The notes: generated by a model from the sequence alone, not told the origin. 64,000 bases of DNA from Lepidodermella squamata (GCA_047495785.1 JBLDXI010000009.1:4278001-4342000); one strand, 5' to 3'; positions 21,170-57,805 are shown, counted from the first letter of the stretch. Numbers and translations: made by a program.

Positions 21170-22549
21170 TCATCTAATTGGTTTTTTGTTAACTACAACG
21201 ATGACGCTGTTGTTTGGGGATGAAGATCTCGTAGAAGGTATTGGTATAGGATCAGCCGAGTCCAAATTCATGCCGTCGACTGTTTGGCTTCCTTCTTGCT
21301 TCTCGGGTTCGGATGAGGATTCAGTCTTCCGCTGGCAAGAGAATTTCGGGAAGCAGCGGTCGCGGTAGGTTGCCAAGACGTCCATTGCATCGATGTGGGA
21401 AAGAACTTCGTTGATAGTTCCGAACAGGGTTGACATGAAAATGAGGCCAAAAAATAGCCACAGAGATAGAAATACGCGGTACAGAGACTCTGTCCAAGGT
21501 TCTCGGTTGTAGGTTGAATCGTTCTCTTCAAACCCAGCCATAAGATCCCCAAATCCTGAGCAAAAAGTCGATTTGTTAGGTCTATTTAATCAGAAATAAT
21601 TTTCCTTACCAATGGTTGATAACGATATGAACCCAAAGTAAAGAGCTGTTGCGAAGTTCCACTCCTTCTCCATGAACCAGAACAGGAAAGCAGGACAAAC
21701 CAAGAAAAACAGAGAGCCAGCTAGTGATACCATGAAAATCGCGCAAATCGTCTTTGTGCGGAATTCATCTTCAGATTTGCGCATCGAATTCCGCTCGGCA
21801 AGTCGTTGGCAGGTCGCTACCAATTGCCTTCTCAGCTCTGCAGCTACAGCGATAAAAAGAGGTATCCCGATTACGGCGTAAATCACCGCACAAATTTGAC
21901 CCAGCGGTGTCACAGGTGCCATTTTCGCGCCAAATCCTACAGTAGCCAATAGGCCAATGCAGAAGAGAAGTGACCCAGGCAAATCCCATCTGTTGCTTGA
22001 TTTCGAACTCAATCTTTGATAATCTATATTAGCTCGGACCTCCTTAGTCGCGTTTCGGTAGTAAATCGTCAACAGCTGTCGATGAAACGTGCCGTAGTAG
22101 TAGTTACCAGCAATTGTCTCGCTAACCAGTTCAACCGAAATGTTGACAATTGAAATTTGATTTCCGTTCCTCGACGTGAATTCATTGATATCAGCTATAT
22201 TGTCGAAAGTCGCGTTTAGCAACTCGGCCTCGTTGTCGACTGCGCTAATTTGCTTGACAGGCGTTGCGATTACTCGGTAGTCCTGATTCTCCAATAGGCT
22301 GAAAGTGACTGTACCAACTGCAAGCCAAACGGCGAGCAGGAAGCAGTACACTCCGAAAATTAAGTTAACTTGATGAGATTGGCACTTTGTTAAGCTGAGG
22401 GAATTGACTGATCCTGAATACGGACTTGAAACCCGTGAGAAGATAGGTGGTTCTCTATTGACTGGTTCGATCAAAGGCGAATCAGAATGGTTACCAGAAC
22501 CATTCTCCGCCGGGCTGTCCGATTGACGTTGGCAACATTTAGCAGCCAT
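21170..22549 (-). CDS. K2P potassium channel 1 (~441 aa, 2 coding exons, outlier of the array)
   Basis: Exons 22549-21610 and 21555-21170; P1 TVGFG, P2 TIG|FGDLMAG; four hydrophobic segments. Confidence 0.9.
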
Positions 22550-23362
22550 TGGTTTTGATTTAGGAGGGTAAAGCGGCTTTTTGCTCAAGTCTGAAAATAG
22601 TATCAAATTCATTTTAAATTCATTGAAAATATTCGAAAGCTTGACGCGGGGAAAATGGGAGTGTCTTAATGAATGTTTATGCTAATAGGTCACGTAAATT
22701 TTAAGGAGGAAGATAAACAAAGGGTGGGTGTTTAAAAATTGTACGAAATATATTGCGCGTGAAATGATTATTACCTGCTGATGCTGCTGTGACCGACGTC
22801 AGCATAATAATTGTTGTCGCAGTTTTCACTGTTTATCGCGCGATTTCTTTTTGAAGCCGGCACGCGCGGCGAGCCATAAAACAGTTGAATAGAGGAGTAG
22901 GCGCGAGATGCAATATCACCCGAAAGGTGCGAAATATTGTGCGTGTGCGCGACTCTCCTCCTAAATGGTCGTGATCTTTTTTACCGCTCGCAATGAAAAC
23001 ATTAGAGCGCGAGGCGAAGGTAAATAATAATAACAATCATTAATCCTGTCAATTTTACAGGCCGTCGCCTTAAAGCGAGACTCGCTGCTCTACGTGTAAT
23101 GATCATTTTTCGATATCATTGCACGATGCACCTGGGTGATATTAATGAAGTGCGTTAAAAAGGCACGCCTCAAGTGCGGTCTAATGACACTGCGTGTGCG
23201 CGCGTGCCGCGGTCAATGCTGGCAACAGTAAAAAATTAATTAAAAAATTGTGCGACTGCACGCAACTTCCATTAATTTGGTACAAAACTCGCTAAGAGAC
23301 CCGAAACATTAATTCAGTACGTTGCTGGGCACGTTGAGAGTTCATTTGATCTCAATTGTTTA

Positions 23363-24636
23363 TTAGAGTGTATTTTCAGGTGTGCTTCGATCCACTACCT
23401 CATCTTCAAAAGCATTTATCTCCGTAACGGTTCCATTGTTCTTCCTTTTACATCTTCGAAGCCATTGTACAATTATATTGACGAGTAAATTCAGTCGAAT
23501 TTGCATTTCGTCCAAAATTATTGAAGTGTATGACATGCCGACGAATGTGAAAACGGACAAGAAAGTTCTGTACACCGCAAACTGCCATCGTTCAAAAAAT
23601 TTGTCATGCATGTTCTGACCAGCAATCAAATCACCAAATCCTGAAAAATATCAAGTGAGAATTTTGTTCGCACATCAAAGTTCAAACCTATTGTCAACAC
23701 AGTGATGAAGGTGTAGTACCAAGCGGACACGTAGTCCCATTTTTCCATGTAATGAAAAAAGCCCGACGTTCCAAAGATTAGAGCGAAGTATGCCGCAAAT
23801 AGGAAGATTTTCGTGACTAGCCAGGACCTCTTCTTAATCGATGCATTCTCATCCTCCGAAATCACTTGCACGACCTCCGAATAGTTGCTAGCTCCATCGT
23901 TAGTTGGATTAACCCGCAACTTCATGTCGACCCAATTCGAGTAATCACGTTTTAATCTCAGCGTCACGAAATACCGGATGATTCGTATGAACACATTTTG
24001 CAGCGGCTTGGAGGTCAGTAATGTTAGCTCCTTTATTTTCCCGATGGCGTTTAGGCAGATTGGTATCCCGATAATAGCGTAGAAAACGCAGAAAATCTTA
24101 CCAAACGTTGTTACAGGTGCCAAGTTGCCATATCCTATAGTAGTAACTACGGTCTTTGAAGCAAAAATAATTATTTCAACATCATCCAAGGTAAGAAAAC
24201 TGACCACACAGAAGTACAGTGATCCAGCGATATCCCATTTCGCTGTAGTAAGGATACTGTCTAGCTCATCAAACGAGCAGTTTGGGACCAACGTGACGAC
24301 AGCTCGTTGAAAAATGATTTCAGTGTAGCTTGACGTTGCATTTTTGAAGGTTTGGACCGACAGCAAATTGATGTTCTGCACGTCAAGACTTCGTAGGTTA
24401 ACCCCGTTCTCAAAGATCAAAGTTTCCTCAGAGCTGTTTTGGTACTGAATGACCTTCGGGCAGGTCGAGTTGTCGGAAATTTCTGCTATATAGTTCCGCC
24501 TTTGTTCAAGCTCAGCTGGGTGTTCCACGAAATGGAAACAGATCATGCCAAAACCGAGCCATAATACGTTCAGCAGATAACTGATCAATGCACTGATTCT
24601 AATCTCACAGGCAACATCTATTTCATCATCACTCAT
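23363..24636 (-). CDS. K2P potassium channel 2 (~391 aa)
   Basis: Exons 24636-24205, 24153-23688, 23640-23363; P1 TTIGYGN, P2 TIG|FGDLIAG. Confidence 0.92.
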
Positions 24637-24750
24637 TTTTCATGCTTAAAAGAAGTGAGAGACTGTTTAATGCGAACAAGCTACACTCTGCAAGTGTCTT
24701 CTGATTCAATATTTGCTTTCTCCTGATATCTCGAATTACGATATTTTTAT

Positions 24751-25759
24751 TCACGATTTATTATTGCGCCGACATATCTTCAATACAGCACAGCCTATGC
24801 TGTAGTTGATCAACATTTCTATATGGTCAAAAATGATTGACGTGAAGGCCATGCCAATGAATGCCGTTACTGATGTGAAGACTCTGTAAAGCGCCAGTTT
24901 CCATGGCTGATCCACAACGTCAGTTATGTATTGCCCAGCAACATAATCTCCGAACCCTGGATTCATAAATAAAGCATCAAATCAGGATAAAAGATCTTTC
25001 CTGGATCTTACCAATTGTTGAAACAGTGATGAAAGAATAGTAAAGACTTGTTAGGAAAGACCAAACTTCGGCGTAGGAAAGTATCGTCGTTGTCAAAAAG
25101 TAGTAGGCTGCATAGATGATCATAAATATGGCGTAAGTTCCCACCCAGCAGCGAATAATTAGCTTCTTGCTGGTCTCAGGCAGTTCATCGGTTCCGACTT
25201 TCTTGCATCGGGATAGCAAAGCTGCATGTAGGACTCTTGCGTGGGCATAAACTGATTCGCGAATTCGACTAATAACATTTAGGCAAATAGGTATGCCGAA
25301 TGTTGCGTAGACTACGCAAAATACTCGACCCGCATCGGTTTGCGGGCTAAAATTGCCGTAGCCGATAGTGGAAATTACTGTCTACAGCGAAAAAGTGATT
25401 TAGCAATAAGAACGCGACTCGAGGCTTACTATGCAAAAGAAAAGTGATCCTGCAAGCTCCCATTTCGACTCGCCTTGAGTTTCATTCTTTATCCGAGAGC
25501 AGTCCACAATTTCTGCCAATTTCAACGTTTCAGCCTTGGTTAGAGCAGAGTTATAGCTCGAATTAGCTGCATACAGAATAATAGGCGTTTCGAGGCTGAT
25601 GTTGCTGCATTTCGCTAGTTTATCGCTAAGAATTCTAGATTCATTCGGCCTCTCGATTATGTGAAATATCGCCATGCCGAAGACGAGCCATATAATTATT
25701 AATCCGTAGCTCAATAGAATACCGAATCGCAATTCTGATAGGGTTGGCGAATCAGCCAT
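24751..25759 (-). CDS. K2P potassium channel 3 (~301 aa)
   Basis: Exons 25759-25430, 25381-25012, 24956-24751; P1 STIGYGN, P2 TIG|FGDYVAG. Confidence 0.92.
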
Positions 25760-26001
25760 TAATTTAGCCAAACCTATACATTAATAGTATATTACCTCGG
25801 GATTTATCAAGCTACTGAGGACTGAGGATATCAGAAACAGCAATGACATACAGCAAATGAGCAAACGTAGCTTGCCATGGCACGAATGCAGTATTAATGG
25901 ATTGTCGGCTTCAATCAATTGAAGCCCAAATAATTCCATCGGAAATTTGTTTACACTGACATGGCTTATAATAGATTTCAGAACAATCGTGTTTATCCTC
26001 A

Positions 26002-26539: not shown

Positions 26540-28705
26540 GCTTTAGAAATTAAGGAATTCTTCCCGGTGTTGAGGGCAGAACCGAGAATTCTGCCCGCTG
26601 AAAATGCCCGAGGGCGTAGCGGAGCGCAGCGAAGCGAAGCCCGAGGGTATTTTCAAGGGCTGAATTCGAGGTTTTGCCCGAGACACAAGGGAAGAGTTCC
26701 TGTTCCTTCCCAGTTGGTTATTTTCGTTAATCCGACACTCGGACGAGTGAAAATGGGGAATGGTGTATAGTGCGTATGAAAGATGACCGTTGTTAATAAC
26801 GAAAATAAGAAATCCAGCTTAAAATTTGTAGCAAATTTTTTTTTGAATTTTTTTGTTCGTTGTTCATTTCCTTGTTTTATTATCAATTGAATATTGCGAA
26901 TTTCCGTCGAATTTTCAATGGAGATCACTTTTGATATTGGCGACCTGGGCCTCGGTGCTCTCGCTGACGGCTCCGTGGAAGTGAAACAGCGCGAAGAATC
27001 CGATCCAATTCGACTTCTCGAACGAGAACTTGATGCTGATATCGAAGAAGAAGAATCCGATGAAGAGGGTGATACGTCGGAGTTCATTCAAGAAGTCGAA
27101 AATTTCGTGGCTGGTTTTGAAGCAAACGGCACAGCTCAGAAAACCAAGCAGCACTGGAGCCGATTTGTCGCATTTGTCGAGCAGCGATTCCACATTTCGG
27201 AGCAACTATTAGTTGAACTTACGGTCAAGGATATGGATCTCTATGTCGCTCTTTTTCTCAAGCAGTTGACGAAGACTGATGGTAGCGCGATGGAGCCGAC
27301 AACGATTCGAGGCATTTATTCCTCCATCATTCGCCATCTCCGCGATGTGACGAAGAACGAAATCAACTTCACCATGGCGAGAGTCGATTTCTTCTATAGC
27401 ATGAAAATGCTGAAATCCAAGTTTGTCGAATCTAAGCGTGCTGGAAAGGGAAATAAAGCCCGAGCATCTGAATGCCTAGAACGAGAAGATATTGATAAAA
27501 TGCGTGAGGCGAAAACGCTGACTGATGACACGCCAATCGGTTTGATCACGATGCTGTGGCTGGTTTTCACCGTGTATTTCGGTCTTCGTGGCCGTGATGA
27601 ACATCTACAAATGAAGTAGGTTGTTGGATTGCCATTGAAAAATTGTTAAATTGGCCATTTTCAGGTTTGGTGATGTCCAGCTAAAAACCGAATCTGGAGG
27701 TCGCAGGTATCTCGAATTCAACGAGCGACAGACTAAAACCAGGAATGGCGAATCAACCCACTCAAAACTGGCACCACGAGCATACGAGAACGGTGGCTTT
27801 TTCTGCCCGGTTCGATTGTTCCTTATTTTTTGTGCAAAACGACCGGGAAAGTTTTCGCGCCCGAGTGACCCAATGTATGTTGGTTGCCTGACCCGATTTC
27901 GACCCGACGGCCTCTTCTACAAATGCCAAAATTTGGGCAAGAACCCCCTTGGATCGCTCCTCAAGGACGCCGCTGTCGGTGCTGGTATTACCAAACGAAT
28001 CACGAACCACTCGGCTCGAAAGTTTCTCGTCTCAACCCTCTCTGAACTCGGTGTCGATTCTCGAAAGATCATCCAGATTACTGGTCATGCATCGGTCGAT
28101 TCTCTGAACAGTTACCACAAACTCAACACCTCTGAACGACGAAGTATCAGCGACAAACTGGCTGTCGGTTTCGGTGATGGACAATCAGCTGCAGTTTCGG
28201 GTGTGTCTGCACAAGAGATCAAGCCAACCGAAGGATTGGTGGTGGCCGAGTCGCATTTCTCGCAAACGCTGCTGCTTCGAAACGTCGAAAATGACCCGCG
28301 CGATGAGCCACCCGTAAAGCAAGCTAAACCCATGCCGATCTTCAATTTCTCGAATTGCTCCGTCGTTATTAACAATTAATCCGGCCCAAACACTTGTTTT
28401 AAAGTTTAAACATTCTAATAAAGGTTATTCACTTGTTCACTCGTTTGGTCAGAGTCTGAAGGTTGTAGTAAAGGGACTGGGAACGGAAATTGAAGTTGTG
28501 CAACATTATTTCAGGTGAGAGGTTTTCCCGAATTTTCGAGAGCATTAATTGATTTTCGAAAATAAAAAATCCACCCTAATCGTTTGAGCGGGCAGAAACA
28601 GCGGGCAGAAACATCGGGCAGAATCACTTTTTCCGTCTAGGCAAAAAATAACCAACTGGGCAGGAACAGAACGGAGGATGCCTTGAAACTAAAATGGCTT
28701 TAGAA
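26540..28705 (+). mobile_element. Crypton-type tyrosine-recombinase DNA transposon, apparently full length
   Basis: Single YR gene; terminal direct repeat GCTTTAGAA (26540-26548 and 28697-28705); 25-bp subterminal inverted repeat (26700-26724 and 28645-28669, 1 mismatch); ~106-nt hairpin at 26574-26679; three CGGGCAGAA repeats at about 28589-28623. Confidence 0.82.
26918..28379 (+). CDS. Tyrosine recombinase (Crypton/DUF3504-like, ~470 aa)
   Basis: Exons 26918-27615 and 27665-28379 (49-nt GT-AG intron). Catalytic set present: FGLRG (R), TKT (K), TNHSAR (H-x-x-R), ITGH (H), LNSY (Y). AATAAA at 28417. Confidence 0.88.
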
Positions 28706-28929: not shown

Positions 28930-29090
28930 ATATCAACTAATCGGATGACATTGTTTGATTAAAACATTAAGCGAGTGCGCATTCTGCAGATTTCTGTTCT
29001 TTAGAATATGTTTTTTTGATTGCTGCTACTTGAATTATTTTCGCACACTGGCAAAGCCGTTAAGTAATGCCGCCAATCACGTTATTGAAG
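28930..29090 (-). pseudogene. Degenerate remnant of the 3' end of K2P gene 5
   Basis: Aligns by eye with 33180-33340 (TTCTGTTCTT...TGTTTTTT.GATTGCTGCTACT...TTTTCGCA.ACTGG.AAAGCC). Confidence 0.7.
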
Positions 29091-29880: not shown

Positions 29881-30892
29881 TCACGATTTATTACGCCGGC
29901 ATATCCTCAAAGCAATACGGCGTATGGTGTAGTTGATAAACATTTCCAGTTGTTCGAAAATTATTGACACGAAAGCCATGCCAGTAAATGCTGTAACTGA
30001 AGTGAAGACTCGATAAAGCGCTAGTTTCCACCCTTGGTCCACAACATCATTTATGCGTTGCCCGGCAACATAATCTCCAAACCCTGCGTTTATAAGGAAA
30101 TGAGCTTCAGTTAGTGTAGAGTTTCCGATGATCTTACCTATTGTTGAAGCGGTGATGAAAGAATAGTAGAGACTCGTAGGATAGGACCACATTTCAGCGT
30201 AAAAAATAATGGTGGTTGTAAAAAGGCAGTAAGCTGTATATATCAGCCCAAATAAGATGTAAGTTAAAACCCAGCAGCGAAAAATTAGCTTATTGCTGGT
30301 CTCAGGCGTTTCTTCGCTGTATACTCCACATTTTTTGAAACGAGATAACAGTGCTGAGTGAAGAACTTTGGCGTGGGCGTAAATCGACTCACGTATTCGG
30401 CTAATCACATTCCAACATATTGGTATGCCGAATGTTGCATAAATCGCACAAAATGCTCGACCTATATCAGTCTGTGGACAAAAGTTGCCGTAGCCGATAG
30501 TGGAAATTACAGTCTACAACGAAAAATTCTGGAATGGGAAGATTTCAGGATTGAAGGCTTACTATGCAGAAGAGGAGTGCGCCTGCAAGCTCCCATTTCG
30601 ACTCGCCTTGGGTTTCATTCTTGATCCGAGAACAATCCACAATTTCAGCCAATTTCAACGTTTCAGCCTTGGTTAGAGCAGAATTATGGCTCGAATTGGC
30701 TGCATATAGGATAATAGGTCTTTCGAGGCTGATATTGCTGCATTTCGCTAGTTTATCGCTAAGAATTCTAGATTCATTCGGCCGCTCGATTATGTGAAAT
30801 ATCGCCATGCCGAAGACGAGCCATATAATTATTAATCCGTAGCTCAGAATAATACAGAATCGCAACTCGGATAGGGTAGGCGAATCAACCAT
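29881..30892 (-). CDS. K2P potassium channel 4 (~302 aa; recent paralog of gene 3)
   Basis: Exons 30892-30563, 30513-30138, 30083-29881; STIGYGN / TIG|FGDYVAG; exon 1 is nearly identical to that of gene 3. Confidence 0.92.
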
Positions 30893-33222: not shown

Positions 33223-34465
33223 TCAGCATCCTGAAGTTTTCTGTTCTTCAAAAGATGTTTTTTCGATTGCTGCTACTCTGATTCTTTTCGCAGACTGGTA
33301 AAGCCATTTGGCGATTGTGCCAACCATATTGCTTAAGCGAGTTTCAAGGGCTATGATGATGATGGAGGTATAGGACATGCCCATGAAAATGAATACTGAC
33401 AGGAAATTTCTGTACAGAGCAAATTTGTAGTAGCTCGTGAACAGCTTATTCATATCTTGGCCAGCAACCATATCTCCGAAGCCTAAATTAAAAAACACAG
33501 CGTTTCCTAGCTTAGTTAGGCTCATGGAAGCTTACCAACTGTCAAAACTGTGATAAAGGTGTAATAGAAAGCTTCGATGAAGTTCCACCCTTCGATGAAG
33601 ATAATGAAACCAGCTGCTCCGAAAATGAAGCCGAAGTAAGCCAGAAGTAGAATGGCACAGGTTAGAATCCAGGCGCGAGTTTCGATTTTCAACTGCAGCT
33701 CGTGCGCCCTTTCCGAATTGCTAGACAAATCATACAGTTGCAAGTTTAACCAGGCTGAAATATCTTCCTTTGATCTTCGTGCAATAGCAAAGTTGAAAAG
33801 TTGTATCAAAGCTCGATGCATCCTCCAGGCAAAATGGTATGTTAATTTTCTAAGCCTCGTGACAGCATTGAAGCAAATAGGAATTCCGATAATTGCATAT
33901 AGGACGCATAGAATCCTCCCTGTATCTGTTGCTGGATACAGATTTCCATAGCCAATTGTTGTCACTAGAGTCTGATATTGATGATATGTTCAAAGATCAA
34001 AACAAGAAATCTTTTTATACTTACAACGCTGAAGTACAAGGAACCGGCTAAATCCCACTTTGAGGTTAATTCGGAGCTACCCAGCTCTCCAACCGTACAA
34101 TTAGGGACTAGCCTAATCACGGTTCTTTGAAAATCGACCTTCAAATACGTTGATGTCTCATTTGTGAAGGTTTTCAGCGATATCAATTGCAAGTTTCTCA
34201 CGTCGCCAAATTTGTAAGCTGCGGCCAGGTCGAGAATCGTTGTCTCAACTGTGTCGTTATCATATTGAATCACCTTAGGGCAACTTTGGTTTTGAGACTT
34301 CCTGGAGATTAAATCCATAGCCCGCTGAATTTCGGCCGGGTGTTCGATGTAATGGAACGTGACCATCCCGAGGATGAGCCAAACAGATAGGAACACATAG
34401 CTGAGGGCTGCCCCTATACGTGCCTCGCCAATGTTAGGCTCCTTTTCAACAATAGGGGATGTCAT
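33223..34465 (-). CDS. K2P potassium channel 5 (~378 aa; closest to gene 2)
   Basis: Exons 34465-34025, 33971-33536, 33482-33223; TTIGYGN / TVG|FGDMVAG. Confidence 0.92.
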
Positions 34466-34667: not shown

Positions 34668-35696
34668 CTACTTCCCGCCTCTGCAAATCAACTTTACTAT
34701 ACGCGCTATTAGTTTGCTAATCAACTTTTGTATTTGCTCTAGAACAATGGAGGCGATTGCCATACCGGTGAAAATATTGACTGATAGAAAAATCCGGTAA
34801 AGCGACATCTTCCACCTGGCATCCAAGACTTCGTTCATCACTCGCCCGGCTATGAAGTCACCAAAACCTGAAAATATCCGACATTTGATTTGATTTCTCT
34901 CAGGGGTAACGACTCACCTATAGTTGTTAGTGTGACAAAAGTGAAATAAAGACTCGGGAAATATTCCCAACTTTCGACTCCTTTGATAATCGCTGTTGAC
35001 CCAAGGACATAGGTTACGTATAGCACTGTAAGTAGGAAGTAAGCTGCGATCAAACATCGGAGATTTAGCGAATTCGAAGCCGAATCTTTGCCTCCCACTA
35101 CTTCTGTTTTCACCACGAATCTTCGGTACAAAGAGGCTTGCAAGCGCTTTGCGATCGCATGGATAACTTTTCGAGTCAGACTTATAACATGCCAGCATAA
35201 AGGGATTCCAATGATTCCATATAGGATGCAACATGCTCTCCCAGCCACTGTTTGAGGTGAGAGATCTCCGTATCCTATCGTAGTTACAACTGCCTGAAAA
35301 AACGACAATTATTTTCAATATCAAATCAGCAGTACTTGAAAAACAAACGACGCTGAAGAAAAGCGACCCGGGCAAGTCCCATCTCGACAAATTTTTCTTT
35401 ACATCAATTCGAAGAAGGGAGCAAGATATCAAGTTTGAAATATTGCCTGCTGTCGCATTACGATTGATCCGACTCTCCTCCATCGAGTACTCGACATTGC
35501 TCATTTCTATCTTGTCCAAACTTCTGACGCTAGTCTTGAGGCTAGTGTGATTGAAACACTTGGCTAGCCACTTATCAGGTGGATTTTGCTCGCATGGAAA
35601 TTCAATGAGATAGAAAGCCACCATCCCAATTACAATCCATGCAGCAAGAATCAAATAGCTTATGAAAAATGAAAGTTTCAGCTCTTTTCCTGACAT
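34668..35696 (-). CDS. K2P potassium channel 6 (~307 aa)
   Basis: Exons 35696-35349, 35293-34918, 34867-34668; TTIGYGD / TIG|FGDFIAG. Confidence 0.9.
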
Positions 35697-35789: not shown

Positions 35790-36797
35790 TTATTTCTTAT
35801 TGCGTCGGCATATAGCGAACACCATGCGACTTATTAAGAAAGAGATCGATCTTTCTAATTGATCGAAAGCTATTGATGCCAGGGCCATGCCTACGAATAC
35901 GTTGATTGAGATGAACACGCGATAAAGGGCCAACTTCAATGATGTGTCAATGGATTCAGTTATATTTCTACCAGCAATGAAGTCACCAAATCCTGTGAAA
36001 ATTACTTGGTTTAAATTGGTCTCGTAAATTGGTCATAAGCAATTTTACCTATGGTTGAGATTGAGATGAAAGAGAAGTAAAGACTTGTTGTATAAGGCCA
36101 ACACTCCGCATAATGGATGATTGCTGAAGTTGCCAGGACGTAGCCAGCGTACAACGTAACAAGGATGATATAAGTCAAAACCCAACAAATGAGGACCCTT
36201 TTGTCGATTTGACTAGCACCCGTAATATCTTGAACGACCGTTTTTTTGCAACAAGGTACATCTAGGAGCTTCGAATGCAGTTTCTCCGCATGGAAGTAGA
36301 CCGACGATCGGATACGATTCATTACATTCAAGCAGATTGGTATTCCAAAGAATGCGTAGACAACACAAAAAGCTCGACCAGCCTCAGTTTGGGGCGCAGA
36401 GTTGCCGTAGCCTATGGTTGATACTACCGTCTAGGAAAGAATCACTAAAATTACACGGAAATTTCCAAAAACTAATGTGGCTTGCAATGCAAAAGAAGAG
36501 TGCCCCAGCCAGTTCCCATTTCGACTCTCCATTTGTTTCATTCCTGAACTGATAGCAATTGACTATATCTGGAATCTCAATCTCGGAAAGCGAAACATTT
36601 GACCGCAAAATTTTGTAGGACTTGGAGATGCTGAGGTTGTTGCATTTCTCGGAGACGTCACTGATCATTTTTGCTTCCGGGGGCTTCTCGATAAAATGAA
36701 AAATTATCATGCCGAAAGCGAGCCATATCAGGAGTAAGAAATAGCTCAGGATAATGCCAAAACGGTGCTCTGCAGCAGTCGGAACTTCCTGCGCCAT
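35790..36797 (-). CDS. K2P potassium channel 7 (~298 aa; GC-AG intron 1)
   Basis: Exons 36797-36486, 36430-36049, 35992-35790; STIGYGN / TIG|FGDFIAG; the first donor is GCAAGC. Confidence 0.87.
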
Positions 36798-42063: not shown

Positions 42064-43178
42064 CTATGCCGCTGTCTGCATTTCATCCGAGCTGTTTTTT
42101 CTTGCACCGACCTGATTTATCGGCTGCTGTTTCGAACATTTCATCATAGGTCTCACGATTTTGTTAACCAGTTGCGTTACCATGTTCTCAACGTGACCGA
42201 AGAGAATAGAAAACATGGCGATTCCAGCATAAGTATAGACTGACAGATAACATTTGTAGACGCTTAGTTTTCCAATAGTGTCAACAGCCGCAGTCATTTT
42301 CTGCCCAGCGACGAAATCTCCGAAGCCTGAAAGATGAATGCTGATTAGACTTTACTTCAAGTCTTCTGAAAAAACTTGCCTATTGTCGAAAATGCGATAA
42401 AGGTGTAGTAAAGAGAGTGGCCGTAGCTCCATGTCTCTATATAATGAATGATTCCAGCTGACCCAAGGATGAGTATAGCGTAACCAAGGCAAAGGACCGT
42501 TATTGTCACAGACCAAGCTTTCTTGTTCAAACTGGCGTCATTCTGATCGGGACTTTTTGTCAATTTTCTGAGAAACCATGACTGCATTCTTTGAGCACGA
42601 TCATTGACCGACTCCCGTAGCCTAGCTGTTGCGCTAGTGCATATAGGAATTCCGATTATTGCGTAGAAGAAGCACATGAGCTTTCCGATAATTGTAGCAG
42701 GCGCCAAAGTGCCAAATCCAATGGTCGTAACCACTGTCTAAAAGGTCAAAAGATATCAACAAATGAGGCTAATATGGATTCGGACTTATACCATGCTAAA
42801 AAATAAGGCACCACTCCAGTCCCACTGGGAAGTTTTGTAAACTGCGGGATCATTCTCGGTGTTCATCGTTCTTGAATAATTGACAATCAAATAGGTCGCA
42901 GTTACATTTGTAAAATAATCCATCACGGCAATGTCGATGTTTTGAAGCCTAGATCTAGACATGTGCTGCTCGAGTTGAGCGATATCAAAAGTTACCGTTT
43001 CTGTAGTGATTTGACTAGTCTGGCTGCTTTCTGACTGCGCCTTCTCAAGCTCGTAAGGATACTCGCAATAGTGGAAGACGATCATGCCGACAAGGAGCCA
43101 AATGGCGAGGAGAGCATATGAAACAACAACTGTTACTCGCCTTTCACACGGCGGCGGTCTAGTTTCGTCGTCACTCAT
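42064..43178 (-). CDS. K2P potassium channel 11 (~335 aa; GC-AG intron 2)
   Basis: Exons 43178-42792, 42737-42380, 42326-42064; TTIGFGT / TIG|FGDFVAG; the second donor is GCAAGT. Confidence 0.88.
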
Positions 43179-44447: not shown

Positions 44448-45561
44448 CTAGGCGGCTGGCTGTATTTCATTCGAGCTATTTTTGCTTGCACTGATTTGAT
44501 TTTTTGGCGATTTTCTCGAACATCTCGTCATAGGTCTGACAATTGTGTTAACAAGCAGAGTTACCAAAGACTCTAATTGGGAGCAGAGAATTGAAAACAT
44601 GGCGATGCCACCATAGGTATAGATTGACAGATAGAACTTGTAAATACTCATTTTTCCAAACGTATCAACAGCTGCCGTCATTTTCTGGCCAGCGACAACA
44701 TCTCCGAAACCTGGATGATAAATGCCGATTATAGTTTTGACTGCAGGTCTCTTGAAATGCCTTACCTATTGTAGAGAATGCCACAAAGGTGTAGTAGAGA
44801 GAGATGCCGTAACTCCATGTCTCAACATATTGAATGATTCCAGCGGATCCTAAGACCACCACAGCGTAACTAAGGCAAAGGATCGTAATCGTAACTATCC
44901 AAGCTTTCTTGCTCAGGCCAGCGTCATTCTGCCCGGAAGTTTTGGTAAATTTCGGGAGAAACCACCTATGCATTCTCTGTGCTAGATCGTTGACAGTCTC
45001 CCGTAGCCTAGCTGTTGCGCTATTGCATATAGGAATCCCAATTATTGCGTAGAAAAAGCACATAAGCCTCCCGATATATGTAACTGGGGCTAAAGTTCCG
45101 AATCCGATGGTCGTAACCACAGTCTATAATAGCTTGAACGTTAAAATTCGATGTTTGCATTGATATCGACTTACCATACTGAAAAACAAGGCTCCACTCC
45201 AGTCCCATTGAGAAAACGTGGTACTGTTATCGCCATTTTCCGATTTTGGAGTCCTTGAAAACGTGACTATCAAAAATGTCGAAGTCGCATTCGTGAAATA
45301 ATCCATCGCCACAATATCGATGTCTTGAAGTTTGGATCTTGACATTTGCTGCTCGAGTTGAGTGATATCAACAGCTACAGTTTCTGTAGTGATTTGACTA
45401 AGCTGGTTGCTTTCTGATTTCGCCTTTTCAAGCTCGTAAGGATGCTCGCAGTAGTGGAAGATGGCCGATCCAACTAGGAGCCAAATGCTGAGGAGGGCGT
45501 AAGAAGCAGAAACGGATAATCGTTCTTCGCACAGCGATGGTCTATATTCGTTGTCACTCAT
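44448..45561 (-). CDS. K2P potassium channel 12 (~335 aa; paralog of gene 11)
   Basis: Exons 45561-45175, 45123-44766, 44710-44448; TTIGFGT / TIG|FGDVVAG; exon sizes are identical to those of gene 11. Confidence 0.92.
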
Positions 45562-46081: not shown

Positions 46082-47300
46082 TCATTCAGAAATGTCTGAG
46101 GGGCAGCTGCGAATCCGTATTTCTTCAGGCAACAAATCATTCTTTTCTCGGCATTTCCGTCTTAGACAAATACAGCAACATGACGCAACGATGTGATCAA
46201 CAAATTTTTCGAAAATTTTCTCAAGTGACCCTAAGATGATTGACGCAAGGGCCATTCCAACAAACGTAAACATGGAGACGTAAATTCTGTAAGCATTACG
46301 CCAGTATAAGTCAGATATTCCATCCGAAGTGTTGTGTCCTGCAATCATGTCTCCAAAACCTTGAAAAAATGAATGCTTAAATTATATTAGCGTGCATATA
46401 GTTTAGTTACTGACCTATTGTTGACACGGTAATGAAGCAGTAGTAAAGAGTGGATTTGAAAGTCCAGTTTTCGACGAAGCTAATCAGCAGACAGCTTGCT
46501 ATCATGAAACTCGCATATGCTGATGCAAGTATACTATAAGCTGCTAGTATAGATTTGACCCTCAAAGCATCTAGGGAAGCATCAGATGGTTTTTCAGAAA
46601 TAGCCATTTTCGAATACCAGATTTCAAATAGCTTTTGGTTGATGACATCGGCTAGTAGCTGAATATTGGTCCTGATTCGCTTTATGACACCGAAACAGAT
46701 AGGAATTCCGAATATGGCGTACAAAACGCAGACAATTTTCCCAGATTCGGTCGAAGGGGCGAAGTTCCCGTATCCGATTGTCGTCACAACGGTCTGATTC
46801 ACAGAAAAAATGAGAACTCCGATCATATAGAGGAGAACGTAACTTACCAGGCTGAAGAAAAGTGATCCCGTATAGCTCCACTTCTGGACACCCTCCTCTA
46901 CAGCCGCAATCTGATTCTGGGTTTCATTCGTGGCTACCGAGCTTGTTGGAGTCGGCAGAACACTCAGTTTGATGTAAGTCACATTCGCATAGGTTGAGGT
47001 CTTGTTCTCGAAGCGATCCACCACAATATGGCTAACATTGTCCAGGAGGAAGCCGAGAGCGGACAACGGCGGGTTACTTTGGCCTCCGAGGTCTACGATG
47101 AATGACCTTGATTCTAATCGAATTTTCTTCGGAGTAGCCGGGCCTTGAGTCAATGGATCTTGGGTCGGCTCAGGAATGAATAAGCTCGGGGTCTCAACTT
47201 TGTTGAAAATGACCATTCCGAGGCTGAGGTAAAGGATTAAGATGACAAAGCTCACGACAGTCGCAAGTCTAGACCGGCATAAAATTTGGTGGGAATTCAT
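46082..47300 (-). CDS. K2P potassium channel 13 (~369 aa)
   Basis: Exons 47300-46848, 46793-46415, 46359-46082; TTIGYGN / TIG|FGDMIAG. Confidence 0.92.
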
Positions 47301-47548: not shown

Positions 47549-48656
47549 TCAATCAGCGGGCAGTCCTTTATTGTCAATAGCCGGCTTACTAACAACGCAT
47601 GACGCTGGATTACTGAGGGATTTTATGGTTCGATTAACTATCCAGGCGAATGATTTCTCGAGTAAGGCCAGAAGCACCGCTGTCCATGAAATGCCGAGAA
47701 ATACGTATAGAGTGAGGAAAATACGGTACATGATATGAACTGGCAAATTGTTGACAGTTTGCTTCTTTTGCCCGGCTAGTAAATCACCAAAGCCTATATC
47801 ACAATAAATTGAAAAATCCGTTTAATTTAGCAACTAGGAACTCACCTATTGTAGTCACTGTAATGAAAGTGTAATAAAGCGAGGAGAGGTAAGTCCATTC
47901 TTCGACATAGCAAATAACAGCCGAAGTCCCGAAAATGAAAGCCGTGTAAATTGCGATGAAAATTGAGTAGGTTGAAAACCACGCGAAATTATCATTAAAA
48001 TTCTTCTTTGTCACGTGATAATGAAGGAAGGGCACCTCAACAGACTCTAAATGCTCTGATTCTATATAGGAAAGAATCATTTGCTGAGTTTGATTCGCCC
48101 TATATTCAATCATGTCCTTCATCCGCCCAATGGCGTGTAAACATATCGGAATCCCAAATATCGAGTAGAGTGAGCAAAGAATCTTCCCTAAGTCAGTCGA
48201 GGGAGATAAATGGCCGTAGCCTATTGTTGTAACAATCGTCTGAAAATGTGGCTTTAGAACATCTTTGCGATTTTATATAAGACTTACGATGCAGAAAAGT
48301 AAGGAACCGCTAACATCCCATTTAGCAGTTCGGCTTGCAGAGTCCTCTCCTGCCCGTCTGTATTCAATAGTCACGTAACTTGAGGTGAAATTTTTGAAAG
48401 TCTCAACCGAGACGACATCGATATCTCGCAGCAATTCCGAGTAAGGATTTTGCCGTATCTTGAAAACATCGAGCGTTAACTTATTCGTGTTATTGCCACG
48501 TCGAGCTGGAGCATGATCTTCATTCTCAGACGGACACTCAACGTAATGAAAGATGAAAGCTCCGAAAACAGACCATGAAATGAGTACCAAATATGTTATG
48601 AAAATTGCGTTGCGAATTTCGTTCATACTCGCAAGTTTGAGCGGCTCGTCAGCCAT
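47549..48656 (-). CDS. K2P potassium channel 14 (~335 aa)
   Basis: Exons 48656-48288, 48239-47846, 47793-47549; TTIGYGH / TIG|FGDLLAG. Confidence 0.9.
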
Positions 48657-48846: not shown

Positions 48847-49963
48847 TCAAAAATCATTGTCATATCGAGACTTGGTGCGACCCAGAGGTGTATGAGAGTT
48901 ATCTAAGGAGGTTTCGCCATCACCGCGTTTTTTGAAGCAAGTCTTCAAGAGAATTAGATTCACCAGCTTCTCGCAAAGATACTCTAAAACACCGAGGATA
49001 ACTGAAGTGAAGGCCATTCCAATGAAGACGTAGACACATAAGAAAATCCGATAAACATTTAGGGCAGAATAGTTCGAAAGAACCTCCAACCTCTGTCCGG
49101 CCACCAAGTCGCCAAAACCTGATAACGAATTTTAGATGAAACTTCACCTAAAAGTTCAATCCTTACCTATCGTTGTAATGGTGATGAAGTTGTAGTAGAG
49201 TGCCGATAGGAAGGACCATTTCTCGACGTAACTCATGAATGCTGAGACGGATAATACGAGAGTAACGAAAAAAGTGACCAAGATGAAATATGCCAACACC
49301 AATAGTCTAAATTCGTGTTGATTATGGATCACATGCACTGCGATGTTTCGGCGGAACCTATGCTTTGAGCGGAATAGGCGGCACAGATTTCGATGAATAT
49401 CGTTCACGTGAAAGTGGATTAAGTCTCTCAGGCGGCTTAAAGCATGTGAGCATAGTGGGATTCCTATCACCGCATAGAAGGTCACTGTAACTTTGCCAAG
49501 GTCAGTAGCGGGCGCTAAGTGGCCATATCCTATCGTTGAAATTACAGTCTTCAAAACATGAACAACTAAAATTCTCATCTTTCTTGGAGAATGAACTTAC
49601 GAAGCAAAATAGAAGCGATCCCATTATGTCCCATTGGTATGCCTCGAAGTGATCATCCTCGTGATGTGAACCTTTCGTCGCCGCAAAAGTAAGTTCGACA
49701 TATCTCGATGTTTCATTCCGGAAGAACCTGATTTGAATTGCATCGAAACCAGACAGTTTTAATCTATCCCCATCGCTGTTCGTATCAAAAATAACCGTGA
49801 AATTCTCAGTTTTCTCATGCGAAGGTGAAACCACTGGCGACTCTATGTAGTGGAAGATTATCGCTCCAAAAAGTCCCCAAACGCCTAGAACAAGTAGGCT
49901 GATGAAAAGTGATGTTCGAATAGCCCATAGATTGGGCCTTTTCTGCGTCTCTCCAGAGTCCAT
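48847..49963 (-). CDS. K2P potassium channel 15 (~338 aa)
   Basis: Exons 49963-49601, 49548-49167, 49118-48847; STIGYGH / TIG|FGDLVAG. Confidence 0.92.
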
Positions 49964-50143: not shown

Positions 50144-51271
50144 TCAAATCGACGAAACATATTGTTGCGCTTTATCCCATTTCAACTCCTCAACTTCTTC
50201 GATGGGCTCTTTCACGGGTTTAGGACCTAGTCTGAAGCAGATGGCAGTTTTTAGCTCATTCACGAACCATCCGTACAGCTTCAAAAGACCAGTTAGACTC
50301 ATCAGAGAGAGCACCCCACCGTAGAAGATGATTGCGATAAGGAACAGGCGATATACGATCAGCAGAGTGGGATCGGCAAAGTTCTCGCTTTTCTTACCGG
50401 CAATCATCTCCCCAAATCCTGAAATATTGGATAGAACACCGCTCAATTTTTGAAAAATTGTATGGCTCACCTATAGTCGAGATCGTAGAAAAAACGAAAT
50501 ACAAACTGTCGACGATGTTCCAATTTTCCAAATGAGAGATTAAAGCCGAAGTACCGAGAACAAAACCGAGTGTGAACAATAGAAAAATAAAAACGAAAAA
50601 TGCTGTAATTTTGACTTTAAGCCTCGTCCTAGCTGCCTGAAGCCGTCGTTTGAGATTCGGGCCAAGAAACTCTTCCTCACAGGGTATCGCTTGAACTGGG
50701 TCATGTGCGGTGTAGATTTTGTTGAAAATTATGCCAGAATATAGGAAAACTGTGTTTTGAACCTGCCAGATCGCGTGGAAGCACAATGGGATACCAATAA
50801 TTGCGTATGGTATTGTTAGGACTTTTCCTAATTCACTCGTAGGAAAAAGGTGTCCGTAACCAATTGTTGTCATAATAGTCTAAATTTTCTAGGAGTTATT
50901 CAGAATCCTTTGTAGGCAGAGTTCAAAATACTTACGAAGCAAAAGAGAAGTGAGCCACTGAAGTCCCACTTCGTCTCAGCATCCTCGTCTTTAAAATGAG
51001 TTACCTCGGAGAATTGGATTATTACGTAACTTCCAGTCTCGTTTACAAGAATTCGAGCTGAAGTTAAGCTGACAGAGGGCATAATCGGCAAGACTGTATC
51101 ATTCTGGGAGTTTTTGATGGCCAGTGTTCGAATTTTCGGGCGAGAATGGCTCGTGTCCATCTGCGATTCAAGCATGCTGAAGACAGCGGCGCCTACAACA
51201 GCCCAAGCGGCTAAAATCGAACAGCTCAGGCAAAGAGCAGCCTCAACTTCGTACTTTTGCCTCTGTTTCAT
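50144..51271 (-). CDS. K2P potassium channel 16 (~339 aa)
   Basis: Exons 51271-50936, 50879-50471, 50418-50144; TTIGYGH / TIG|FGEMIAG. Confidence 0.9.
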
Positions 51272-51610: not shown

Positions 51611-52868
51611 TCAGCTTATAACATTCGCAACATTTTCTGATGGATAAATTCCGTTTTCATTTGTAGCGTAACTTTTCTGTTGATCAGTTTCCACAATTGT
51701 TGGCACTCGCCTCCTCAGACAGCATCTCAGCATCGCACGGGCGAATTTGGTAATGTACTTGTTAGCTAGCCCTTCCATTTCGGACATCATGACTGACGTG
51801 AAGGCCATTCCGAAAAACACGAAAGTTGCTAGGAATAACCGGTATAAAGTGAAAGAACCATAAGACGCAAATAGCTCCATTTGTTGACCACCGACCAAAT
51901 CGCCAAAACCTATGAGAAAACTGAGTCAACTAAACTTCAAGCGTAGAATACTCCCTTACCTATAGACATGACAGTGATAACGCTGTAGTAGAGAGATGCA
52001 ACGTAACTCCATTTCTCGACGTTTTGAAAAATTCCAGAAATCATGAGCAGAAGTAGTAGATAGGTTAGGATTAGCAGGAAATAGGTCATTAGCCATAGCC
52101 TGGTCTTAATTTTGGTATTACCCCGCCCTGGCACTTCATCAACAGCGGCATTTAGCTCGTTCGAACTAGCAAATCGATCGGCCTGTAGCTCAATCCAAGT
52201 TCCTTCGTTTCGATTCAGGATCTTCAAATAAAGCTTCCTGATCAGACGAAACAGTCCAAGGGCGAATTCTCGACAGAATTTTCTCAGTCGAGATATGACA
52301 TTTAGGGCAAGGGGTATGCCAATAATTGCGTAGAAAACACACCAAACTCGACCAGCATCAGTTCTAGGCGCCAAGTTACCGTATCCTACAGTTGTTACTA
52401 TGGTCTGAAAATTAGCCCTCAAGTTTCGCGGCATGAGCTGTGACGAAATTGACTTACAGTACTGAAGAACAATGACCCAGCCAAGTCCCATCGAGTCGTA
52501 GTTTTGTTCTTGCTAGGAACCACTGGTGCTCGCGTGAAAGTGACATTGAAAAAGTTGGACGAGCCATTTTGGAAAGTTGCTATCGATATGATGTTGACAC
52601 CTTCAATAAGGAAAGCCCCGAGGCCATTCGACGTGAGATTTGTGTCAATAACTAAATTTTCAATCTTTCCCTGCGGCTGCTTGCTCACTGCAGTTGGATC
52701 GGCTGAAAGCATAAGGTAGTCATCGGTATTTTTTGACTCAATGTAATGGAATGAGACCATCCCAAGGCACAGCCATAGCATGAAGATGAGATAGCTAACA
52801 GCATTTGCTGTTCGGATTTCGCCTATAGACAGCGGAGTTGTAGAAACTGTGCTGCTATCCTGTGTCAT
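51611..52868 (-). CDS. K2P potassium channel 17 (~384 aa)
   Basis: Exons 52868-52458, 52404-51960, 51909-51611; TTVGYGN / MSIG|FGDLVGG. Confidence 0.9.
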
Positions 52869-53079: not shown

Positions 53080-54171
53080 TTATTGAAGCCTATCGCCCAA
53101 CGGTTCACAGATTTTAGCGTCATTTTCTGCTGAAAAGTTATCAGTTTCTTTCGTTTCTTCAGCATGAATAATTTCTTCCATGGAACTCTGACCGCGACAC
53201 ATTAGCAAGACGGCTTTGTTGATTAGGAATTCGACCAGCTTCTCCAATTCGTGAAGTATCATTGAGGCGAAAGCAATACCGCCGAAAACGATGAAAGATA
53301 GGAAGATTCGGTAAATGCAGACCGCAACGATGCTGCTGAAAACATCCATCTGCTGGCCAGCAATCATGTCACCAAATCCTAATTCAATTCTTTTAAATTC
53401 GTTTCTATATGCTGTGAAAATCGTACCTATTGTTGTTACTGTTACGAAGAGGTAGTAGACTGTATCGAGAAAATCCCAATTTTCAATCCAGCTTATCAAC
53501 CACGATAACAAGGTGACCAAACAATGGTAGGCCAGTACTAGAATCAGACCGGTAACGGTCCACGTTCGAAAAATCGACCCGGCACGAAACTTCGCGGCCG
53601 ATTTCTCGAAGATTCTTTTGTGGATGTGAGATGAGAGTCGAAGGACTGCTTTTCTTATTTGCCCAACCACATTGAAACAAAGCGGGATTCCGATGACTGC
53701 GAACCAAACGCATATCACTCGACCGGCTGTTGTTACAGGGTACAGATTGCCGTAGCCAATCGTCGTCACAACAGTCTATCAAATTTTTCCTTTAGAAAGA
53801 ACATTTTTTCTGTTAGAACTCACCAAACTGAAGAAAAAGGAACCCAATAAGTCCCATTTCGATGTTGTCTGAGCACTGCCAGGTTTGATGAAGGTGATAT
53901 TGATGTAGGTCGAAGTGATATTGGTGAAGACCTTTGCGGATATCAATTTGACTGGTCCGATATCGGGAATAGTATAATCGGAGTACTCGACCACAATGTT
54001 TTCGGTAGCATTTTGCTCAAGATATTTTTTGTTCTCTGTTTGCTCTCCTGGCGACTCCACAGTATGAAACAATATCATTCCAATACCTAGCCAGATCAGC
54101 AACAGGATATAGCTAAGTAAGAAAGTTGCTCCCGGTAAGGCAACATTTTTCGAGTCTCTGCGACCAATCAT
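53080..54171 (-). CDS. K2P potassium channel 18 (~331 aa)
   Basis: Exons 54171-53824, 53775-53427, 53378-53080; TTIGYGN / TIG|FGDMIAG. Confidence 0.92.
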
Positions 54172-55077: not shown

Positions 55078-56184
55078 TTATTGCGATTCCAACAATGCAA
55101 CATCTTTCGATTCTTCAGCTAAATTGTGTTTACAACTCACAACTTCAGCTGGCTTTATAACAGCAATTTCAGACTGGTCTTCGTTTTTACGACGACAAAT
55201 TATCAGCACAAGTTTGTTAACCACACGCTCGGCTAGCTTTTCCAACTCATGAAATATTATCGAGGCGAAAGCCATTCCACAGAAGACGATGAGTGATACT
55301 GATATGCGGTAGAGGCCATATAGCCAAATGTTGGCGAACATCTGCCTCTGCTGGCCCGCGATCATATCCCCAAATCCTAAATATACATTTTATGGAAGTA
55401 CTGGGGAAAAAAGGGGTATTATCGTTACCTATAGTTGACAATGTTACGAAGAGGTAGTAAAGAGTTGCGGGAAATGACCAGTCTTCCACCCAACTGATTA
55501 AGGTGGACGAGCATGTTATGAAAAAATAGTAGAGCACCAGCATCAAAATGGAAGTGATTATCCAGCTGCGTTGATTTATTGGATTGTTCACCGCCCCTTG
55601 CCGCCTTGACGCAAATCTTTGCATCAGAGTAGTGACTCGGCTATTGAGATTATGAGCGAATCTTAACGCGGTCTTTCGGACTTGGCCAATTACGTTGAAG
55701 CACAGTGGAATGCCGATTACGGCAAAAATCACGCAGGCAAATCTTCCTAATTTTGTTGAAGGAAACAAATTGCCATAACCAATTGTTGTCACAACAGTCT
55801 GAATTAAAAAGAAATGTCTCCTTGAATCTCTGTAATCACAGAACTTACCATGCAAAAGAAAAGTGAGCCCGGTAAGTCCCATTTCGTCGGCTCCGTATTG
55901 CAAGTCTCATTCTCTATGAAGGTCACATTGAGGTAGGTCGACGTTTCATTTTTGAATGTTGTAATGGATAAGAGTTTAAGACTTTTCAATGCAAAAGAAG
56001 CTGCGTCCAATTGTGCAACAATCAAACTTTGCACTACTGCCTCGTTGCTGCCCTCTTCTCCTGGAGATTCGATAAGGTGGAACGCTACCATCCCCACCAG
56101 CAGCCATGTTAACAGTAAATGGTAGCTGACGAACAAAGTCGTTCGGGGATAATCGAATCGCTCTGTGCCAGCGTCGCCGATCAT
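55078..56184 (-). CDS. K2P potassium channel 19 (~334 aa)
   Basis: Exons 56184-55849, 55798-55429, 55376-55078; TTIGYGN / TIG|FGDMIAG. Confidence 0.92.
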
Positions 56185-56629
56185 TGTAAATCCGCCATAG
56201 TTTTCTATCTAAAAATCAATACCTATACGAGTAGGTTCTGCTGATTTCGCACTGATGCAGTGGGTAAATACGTATAGATGATAGCTAGTAAAAAAATTAT
56301 AAGAGGGGCACACACATACATAATATAACTCTGAGGTTATTCGTAAATAGATCGCCGCTACTGATCAATCACTCTCGATACCCCTGTTTTCTTAGAGAAA
56401 TACTCTCAGTAAAATATGTATGTTGGCGTAGTGGAGTACATGTATGCATGTGTGAGAAATCGATTTCAGCCTCGTACTTTCTTATATATCCCGCTGCGAG
56501 AAAACATACGTTTACAAGGGTATGAAGCCCGTAATTATCGGCAAATAGCGTATACGATTCCCTATAGAATTTAGCAAATGGCACACAATCAAATTTGCAT
56601 AATTTCAAAAAATGACTTTATTCAGCACC

Positions 56630-57805
56630 TTATTCTTTATCGTCGCATTTTCTAACATCCAATTCGATTATCTGCTGTTCTTCCTCGATCAAGCATTCCC
56701 TAGCCGCGGCTGATTGCTGAATGCCGATTTTAGATTGCGTTTCGGCAACGGCTTTTCGTCGGCAAATTTTCAGCACGAATTTACTGACCAGGCCATCGGC
56801 TATTTTCTCAAGCTCGTTAATTATCATTGAGGCGAATGCCATGCCGCTGAAGATTATGAAAGACAGAAAAATTCGATAGATGCCAAATACCCACAGACTG
56901 GGAAATATTTCTCGCTTCTGGCCAGCTATCAAATCCCCAAATCCTGAAACAACAAATAATTATGAAAAAATCGAAAATCTCAATATTTACCTACCGATTG
57001 TAGTCAGAGTGACGAACAGGTAATATTGAGTCGTTAAAAATGCCCAGCCTTCAACCCAAGAAATCACCGTGGAAGCCGACATAAGGAATATGCAGTAAGC
57101 AGTGAAGAGTATAACCGAGGTTATAATCCAGCCGCGGTATCTGATCACCCAGTTCAGGCCCAGGCTATCTTGATTTTTTGATGGAAATCTGGCAAACCAC
57201 GCGGCCTGTACCTGACAAACGCGTTTGTGAAGGCGAGAAGCTATTCGAAGTGCAGCTTTTCTCACATGGCCGATGACGTTGAAGCAGAGTGGTATGCCTA
57301 TTATTGCAAAGATTACGCAGGCCGACCGGCCGAGTCGCGTTGATGGGTATAAATTCCCGTAGCCAATGGTTGTCACAACAGTCTATACACAAAAAAGAAA
57401 AATTATCGAATATACCAGACGAATTTTGAAGAAGCTCACAAGGCTGAAGAAAAGAGACCCAGGCAAGTCCCATTTCGAGGTTTTCCTACTCCTGGCGCCT
57501 TGATTGCATTCTTTAGACCTTATGAATGATACATTGAGGTAGCTGGACGTAGCGTTTGTGAAGGAAGCAATCGATAACAGCTGAACTCCTCCGAAATCGG
57601 ACAATGACTTATCCGATTGGTCCACGACCAAATTCTCAACTTCATTTTGCTGGGTCGAAAGTTTGTTCCTCTCTTGTTCCGGTGGCGACTCGATTAAATG
57701 GAAAGTTAACATGCCCAGCAACAGCCAGAGGACAAGCAAAATATAGCTGAAGACTAGGTTAATCCGGGGATATTCGTGTTGCTTGCCGGTGTTGTCGACG
57801 ATCAT
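56630..57805 (-). CDS. K2P potassium channel 20 (~355 aa)
   Basis: Exons 57805-57440, 57382-56995, 56943-56630; TTIGYGN / TIG|FGDLIAG. Start chosen by alignment with genes 18/19; the ORF stays open upstream to 58024. Confidence 0.9.

What the first reader, a model, noticed from the sequence alone, without database searches (positions are those of the whole stretch)
21170..57805. Tandem array of 20 intact, co-oriented K2P channel genes: a receptor-family-like expansion
Seen: 20 complete 4TM/2P genes in 36.6 kb, all on the minus strand. Genes 2-20 share the same two ~50-nt introns (phase 0 in pore helix 1; phase 1 inside the P2 filter Gly codon). Divergence ranges from near-identical pairs (3/4, 9/10, 11/12) to very distant paralogs, yet no stop or frameshift was found in any of them. 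Known: human has 15 dispersed KCNK genes, and large co-oriented arrays with birth-death turnover are typical of chemoreceptor or immune receptor families rather than leak channels. Inference: a lineage-specific K2P family selected to diversify, plausibly sensory; K2P heterodimerisation could multiply its specificities.
Basis: partly seen in the sequence, partly recalled or inferred. Interest (0 to 1): 0.9.

Follow-up and report, generated by a model that had tools for sequence, protein, structure and literature searches.

The report
Twenty potassium channels with unusual cap
A tiny invertebrate (probably the gastrotrich Lepidodermella squamata) keeps 20 intact, side-by-side genes for two-pore potassium channels whose outer cap is predicted to be built of beta strands instead of the usual two helices; the cluster is old and conserved, and a sensory role is possible but untested.

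Summary
The array is real: 20 intact minus-strand K2P genes (21170-57805), 19 sharing two ~50-nt introns; public RNA contigs show splicing in three. Genes 2-20 form one clade (100/99) within a family found only here and in one metagenome animal, whose matching locus has 2 genes, not 20. Corrections: the 'near-identical' pairs are only 73-82% identical (dS 0.6-1.0), dN/dS is 0.15-0.27 in every region including the outer loop, and the only relic is an 83-nt fragment. That is an old, stable cluster under purifying selection, not receptor-like turnover. K2P expansion itself is known (47 in C. elegans). New: two AlphaFold models predict the M1-P1 loop as strand-helix-hairpin, with no PDB, Atlas or Pfam match, rather than the helical K2P cap; paralogs also differ at two known gating positions (proton-sensor site, TM2.6). 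Best reading: diversified K+-selective background or polymodal channels. A ligand-sensing receptor family remains possible (about 0.2). The scan's notes show no earlier report of this family on other DNA.

The parts
21170..22612 (-). K2P gene 1 (462 aa; P2 intron only; one-residue insertion after filter 1; older sister branch, ortholog P0001)
23363..24636 (-). K2P gene 2 (391 aa; two Cys in cap; sister of gene 5)
24751..25759 (-). K2P gene 3 (301 aa; short cap lacking the third strand, two Cys)
26540..28705 (+). Crypton-type tyrosine-recombinase element inserted between genes 3 and 4 (not part of the family; ends taken from note s1-405024)
28979..29061 (-). Decayed copy of the 3' end of gene 5 (83% identity), left by the tandem duplication that made genes 3 and 4
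29881..30892 (-). K2P gene 4 (302 aa; 82% identical to gene 3)
33223..34465 (-). K2P gene 5 (378 aa)
34668..35696 (-). K2P gene 6 (307 aa; Asp after filter 1; intron 2 seen spliced)
35790..36797 (-). K2P gene 7 (298 aa; GC-AG intron 1, junction seen in RNA contigs)
37120..38211 (-). K2P gene 8 (329 aa; intron 1 junction seen in RNA contigs)
37918..38052 (-). Predicted strand-helix-hairpin core of the extracellular cap in gene 8 (residues 54-98); the same block is in exon 1 of the other genes
38362..39556 (-). K2P gene 9 (357 aa; Lys after filter 1; Ser at TM2.6)
40362..41567 (-). K2P gene 10 (362 aa; Ser at TM2.6)
42064..43178 (-). K2P gene 11 (335 aa; GC-AG intron 2; Thr at TM2.6)
44448..45561 (-). 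K2P gene 12 (335 aa; natural Asn at TM2.6)
46082..47300 (-). K2P gene 13 (369 aa; longest cap, 104 aa)
47549..48656 (-). K2P gene 14 (335 aa; His at the proton-sensor position)
48847..49963 (-). K2P gene 15 (338 aa; His at the proton-sensor position; Ser at TM2.6)
50144..51271 (-). K2P gene 16 (339 aa; most divergent; His after filter 1, Glu after filter 2)
51611..52868 (-). K2P gene 17 (384 aa; Ser for the inner Thr of filter 2)
53080..54171 (-). K2P gene 18 (331 aa)
55078..56184 (-). K2P gene 19 (334 aa)
56630..57805 (-). K2P gene 20 (355 aa; an upstream in-frame ATG at 58024 is possible)

Best explanation
An old, lineage-specific tandem expansion of one K2P subfamily (sister to the TREK/TALK/TWIK/ORK1 group), made by unequal crossing-over and since kept by purifying selection. 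Shown: intact genes, one clade, splicing of three of them, dN/dS 0.15-0.27. Predicted: the loop above the pore is a glycosylated strand-helix-hairpin domain, not the two-helix cap. Inferred: the proteins are K+-selective dimers gated at the filter; paralogs were kept because they differ in basal opening (TM2.6 hydrophobic or polar), acid sensitivity (His in genes 14-16) and cap shape, and they set the resting potential and polymodal responses of different cell types, as the expanded TWK family is thought to do in nematodes.
For: Both filters canonical in all 20; whole fold matches solved K2Ps (Z 19.8 to TWIK-1). Genes 2-20 plus the relative's gene 100/99, whole family 100/94. Neighbours tend to be sisters, and a breakpoint relic flanks genes 3/4. 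Pooled dN/dS: cap 0.20, membrane and pore 0.15, cytoplasmic 0.27; 18 silent to 5 replacement differences among the listed coding differences to run X1. Strands predicted at matching positions in two models from different alignments; column hydrophobicity of the hairpin has almost no helical period. His after filter 1 is the proton sensor of TWIK1/TASK (PMC9184524); Asn or Ser at TM2.6 raises activity (PMC6377628). Nematode K2Ps are expanded and cell-type specific (PMC12749960).
Against: No current, cell-type expression or ligand data. Cap models are monomers from shallow alignments (22 and 10 rows); strand pLDDT is 84-95 in one but 62-71 in the other; a per-sequence strand-moment test was not significant (p 0.23). 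A cap re-built into a new fold suggests more than a leak role. Saturated dS hides any early positive selection. Outgroups were a limited sample.
Confidence: 0.55

Rival explanations
1. A receptor-like repertoire: the beta cap is a ligand-binding module, and each paralog (or heterodimer) is opened or shut by a different external chemical or peptide in sensory cells.
For: Cap fold unlike any solved K2P cap; a conserved hairpin scaffold (32% mean identity) among variable segments, 56-104 aa in at least three architectures; cap movement is coupled to filter gating in TWIK1 (PMC9184524); tenfold more copies than at the relative's locus.
Against: No excess of replacement changes in the cap (0.20 against 0.27 in cytoplasmic parts); caps of genes 3 and 4 almost unchanged while their membrane parts diverged; no pseudogenes or young copies; 2-4 glycosylation sequons per cap may shield it; several genes appear in a small whole-animal RNA set.
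Confidence: 0.2
2. A co-expressed battery for ion and volume homeostasis in epidermis, gut or protonephridia, possibly transcribed as polycistronic units; copy number and heterodimers give dosage and robustness.
For: Eleven of 19 gaps are under 450 nt, the shortest 93 and 114 nt; all co-oriented; another agent reports spliced-leader RNA in this genome (s1-421969, unchecked); 8 of 20 genes have a strong splice acceptor within 40 nt of the ATG against 17% of random windows.
Against: The acceptor excess is weak (rank test p 0.10; 5 of 20 in a downstream control); the genome is compact anyway; most genes have their own poly(A) signal; 30-40% identity is far more divergence than dosage needs.
Confidence: 0.17
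3. Largely redundant copies that piled up in a duplication-prone genome, or an amplification or assembly artefact.
For: The scan notes many other tandem channel clusters in this genome (unchecked); if this is the Lepidodermella assembly it came from whole-genome amplification (PMC11660948).
Against: Redundant copies decay: none has, over dS well above 1; dN/dS 0.13-0.23 per pair; no near-identical repeat; independent RNA contigs match several genes.
Confidence: 0.05

Closest known systems
Vertebrate TREK/TRAAK, TALK/TASK2 and TWIK K2P channels (KCNK2, 10, 4, 16, 17, 5, 1) and arthropod ORK1
   Same: 4TM/2P layout, both filter motifs, long SF2-M4 loop; best sequence and fold matches; sister group in the tree (96/92).
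   Different: Only 26-42% identical over the pore core; cap predicted as strands, not the helix pair that defines the solved caps (PMC8436263); no conserved apex cysteine (0 Cys in 11 of 20 caps); late-M2 Gly replaced by Arg/Lys in the family and the M3 Pro lost in genes 2-20.
Nematode TWK expansion (47 K2P genes in C. elegans)
   Same: Lineage-specific multiplication of K2P genes in a microscopic animal, with most functions unknown (PMC9049526, PMC12749960).
   Different: Independent origin (TWK-18/TRESK-like hits lie in another clade, names automatic); here 20 copies sit in one 36.6-kb co-oriented block; I found no paper describing such an array or a beta cap.
Chemoreceptor and immune-receptor tandem arrays (birth-and-death families)
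   Same: Large co-oriented cluster, neighbours related by local duplication, strong copy-number difference between species.
   Different: No pseudogenes, no recent copies, no raised dN/dS in the outer domain; no ligand or sensory expression shown.

Membership tests
K2P (KCNK) channels | Four membrane helices and two pore loops per subunit | tested here: met
   Alignment of all 20; two Ion_trans_2 stretches; fold match Z 19.8, rmsd 4.5, 232 aligned to TWIK-1 for the gene 1 ortholog
K2P (KCNK) channels | K+ filter signature T-x-G-Y/F-G in both loops | tested here: met
   All 20; gene 17 has Ser for the inner Thr of filter 2, gene 16 Glu after filter 2
K2P (KCNK) channels | Extracellular cap made of two helices per subunit | tested here: not met
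   Predicted only: two AlphaFold models give three strands with short helices; no K2P cap among fold matches; lower helix propensity than 37 outgroup caps. Treated as a variant feature; needs a solved structure
K2P (KCNK) channels | Dimeric, K+-selective background current | not testable with these tools
   Needs electrophysiology
Any named K2P subfamily (TREK, TALK, TWIK, TASK, TRESK/TWK-18, THIK) | Nests inside the subfamily clade | tested here: not met
   Forms its own clade (100/94) beside the TREK/TALK/TWIK/ORK1 group; THIK not sampled, TASK and TRESK only by automatically named or unnamed proxies
Birth-and-death receptor arrays | Tandem, co-oriented, monophyletic cluster with copy-number difference between species | tested here: met
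Birth-and-death receptor arrays | Pseudogenes and recent duplicates | tested here: not met
   Youngest pair dS 0.63; one 83-nt relic only
Birth-and-death receptor arrays | Diversifying selection on the ligand-facing domain | tested here: not met
   Cap dN/dS 0.20 (0.15-0.26) in the three youngest pairs; site-level and deep-branch tests not possible
Birth-and-death receptor arrays | Sparse expression in sensory cells and ligand specificity | not testable with these tools
   Only whole-animal contigs
Trans-spliced operons | Unpaired splice acceptor before each ATG and leader-bearing mRNAs | tested here: inconclusive
   8 of 20 strong acceptors, p 0.10; no leader seen, which could not show 5' ends

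The most novel reading that the evidence does not exclude
The family has replaced the K2P helical cap with a beta-sheet domain that binds external ligands, making it a repertoire of ligand-gated potassium channels used as chemoreceptors, with 20 subunits combining as homo- and heterodimers.
Probability: 0.18. Interest if true: 0.9.

Novelty: new variant of a known kind. Interest (0 to 1): 0.6.

Why it matters
The helical cap is described as a hallmark of K2P channels and its purpose is still debated. A natural family that keeps the pore but rebuilds the cap, in 20 intact versions with natural changes at the proton-sensor and TM2.6 positions, is a ready-made series for asking what the cap does, whether M1 domain swapping needs it, and what rules govern heterodimers. 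It is also a second, independent K2P expansion in a microscopic animal beside nematodes, which makes the idea that tiny high-resistance cells favour many K2Ps testable. If the cap binds ligands, it would be a new kind of chemoreceptor.

Tried and rejected
Assembly or amplification duplicate: rejected. Positive selection on the cap: not found. Operon with trans-splicing: inconclusive. The conserved Asn/His in M2 first looked like the activating TM2.6 change, but the paper's numbering puts it at TM2.7; only gene 12 has Asn at TM2.6. Fold and feature searches for the cap gave nothing clear (best Z 5.1, coiled coils; TM at most 0.43; Atlas features at most 0.85; no Pfam); these models included M1, so the cap alone was not folded, and a blank does not prove a new fold. 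Whether the expansion post-dates the split from the relative is undecided: its gene groups with genes 18-20 (96/86) but a clade of genes 2-20 without it is not rejected (AU p 0.11). The relative could not be named from SNF5 or its sample id; its habitat is unknown. No synteny with the relative beyond the K2P pair. Paper searches found no K2P tandem array, beta cap or gastrotrich channel study. Joined spliced models were used only in local scripts; database searches and folds went exon by exon or by natural open frames, by reference.

Full report
Observation. A six-frame scan found the K+ filter motif at 20 places on the minus strand. Genes 2-20 have a phase-0 intron in pore helix 1 and a phase-1 intron in the second filter's Gly codon, 47-63 nt; two donors are GC. 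Gene 1 has only the second intron. A family HMM finds the 59 expected exons and nothing else. The block is 57% coding and lies between an engrailed-like homeobox gene and tandem Cys-loop genes. Contigs of a probable RNA run skip gene 6 intron 2 exactly and carry the exon junctions of intron 1 in genes 7 and 8; only genes 5-9 were laid.

Source. Not told; inferred to be the gastrotrich Lepidodermella squamata. The scan lists 1993 windows on 147 pieces; the published assembly is 122 Mb, 157 contigs, 43% GC, made beside a C. elegans assembly (PMC11660948); the best holder run has a 100-Mb sister run in its study. Other agents reached the same guess, which is not independent proof.

Age and selection. 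Most pairs are 30-40% identical. Pooled by region, dN/dS is 0.20 in the cap, 0.15 in membrane and pore, 0.27 in cytoplasmic parts. Among the listed coding differences to run X1, 18 are silent and 5 change a residue (only the 40 best-supported sites were shown). The youngest event is readable: a unit from gene 5's 3' end through gene 4 was duplicated, leaving an 83-nt relic at 28979-29061, and a Crypton element now sits inside the copy. So the array grew by local unequal crossing-over long ago and has been stable. That is not birth-and-death turnover.

Relatives. An exon-1 profile against 1.84 billion proteins found this loop type only in proteins from a few metagenome assemblies, apparently of one unidentified animal. 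There the ortholog of gene 1 (P0001, 35%) sits directly downstream of one gene with the same two introns, with no other K2P in 9 kb upstream: two genes where the window has 20. That animal has seven more family members at four other loci, including runs of two and three. In a 60-sequence tree of the pore core, genes 2-20 plus the relative's gene are one clade (100/99), the whole family is one clade (100/94), and its sister is the TREK/TALK/TWIK/ORK1 group. Fourteen redundant outgroup rows were left out; THIK was not sampled. Whether the expansion began before the two animals split is open (AU p 0.11).

The cap. Solved K2Ps have a cap of two helices per subunit, usually with an apex disulfide (PMC8436263). 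Here the M1-P1 loop is 56-104 aa with 2-4 glycosylation sequons, one nearly invariant at the tip of a conserved block. AlphaFold on gene 8 exon 1 gives strands at 54-60, 76-85 and 90-98 (pLDDT 84-95); a separate model of P0001 from another alignment gives strands at the matching places (pLDDT 62-71). Column hydrophobicity in the hairpin peaks near 140 degrees with little at the helical 100; family caps have lower helix propensity than 37 outgroup caps, though their strand moment is not higher. Nothing in PDB, the Atlas or Pfam matches the loop, while the membrane part matches K2Ps well. Genes 3, 4 and 7 have lost the third strand and carry two cysteines; genes 2 and 5 have a different cysteine pair. 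I put about 0.75 on the cap really being beta-structured; it is a prediction from monomers and shallow alignments.

Gating positions. Both filters are canonical, so K+ selectivity is likely. The residue after filter 1, the proton sensor in TWIK1 and TASK (PMC9184524), is His in genes 14-16 and Asn, Thr, Lys, Asp or Ala in the others. TM2.6, where Asn or Ser raises activity (PMC6377628), is Leu, Phe, Trp or Ile in most genes, Ser in 9, 10 and 15, Thr in 11 and Asn in 12. The next residue is polar or Gly in all of genes 2-20 but hydrophobic in 128 of 132 outgroups; its effect is unknown. A late-M2 Gly is Arg/Lys family-wide and the M3 Pro is lost in genes 2-20. These point to paralogs with different gating, by inference only.

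How it most likely works. Each gene makes a subunit of a dimeric K+ channel gated at the filter. The paralogs differ in basal opening, acid response and the domain that roofs the pore, and so tune resting potential and responses in different cells (0.55). The receptor reading, with the cap as a ligand-binding module, is not excluded but has no support from selection (0.2). A co-expressed, possibly polycistronic battery for ion balance fits the short gaps, but the acceptor test was inconclusive (0.17). Artefact or redundancy is unlikely (0.05).

Novelty. From memory, human KCNK5, 16 and 17 are also neighbours. I found no paper on a 20-gene K2P array or a beta-strand K2P cap. Verdict: a real, new variant of a known kind; interest 0.6. 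Following the operators' note, joined spliced models were not sent to any search or fold tool; genes 2 and 13 were used as natural open frames that read through intron 1.

Noticed in passing
window 26540-28705 (+): Crypton-type element: two exons with Phage_integrase and DUF3504 hits, inserted inside the gene 3/4 duplication unit; already noted as s1-405024.
   Followed up: partly
window 29161-29533: 38-bp inverted repeat pair (97% identical) bounding about 370 nt, MITE-like.
   Followed up: no
window 17749-19864 (-): Engrailed-like homeobox gene with a very divergent EH2-like motif, directly downstream of the array.
   Followed up: partly
window 1938-3987 (-): KH-domain gene of the poly(rC)-binding protein type, with long introns and a 14-kb gene-poor region between it and the homeobox gene.
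   Followed up: partly
window 60037-62825 (+): Two tandem, divergent Cys-loop channel-like genes (weak Neur_chan hits) upstream of the array.
   Followed up: no
window 38202: One contig of run X1 lacks a base in gene 8 codon 3-4; a null allele, a homopolymer error, or a sign that gene 8 starts in an upstream exon (an acceptor lies 1 nt before the ATG).
   Followed up: partly
window 25430-25759 and 30563-30892: Exon 1 of genes 3 and 4 is far more alike (cap dN 0.014, pS 0.28) than the rest of the genes (dN 0.12, pS 0.45): gene conversion of exon 1 or strong constraint on a shared cap.
   Followed up: partly
window 6975-7492: About 520-nt palindromic stretch (90% self-complementary) in the non-coding region; may be an element or an amplification fold-back.
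   Followed up: no
L011 5376-8956 and L006 8067-11110: The relative has its own small tandem runs (three and two genes) of mostly intronless members of the same K2P family.
   Followed up: partly
L001 7259-9674: SID-1-like RNA channel gene near the relative's K2P pair.
   Followed up: no
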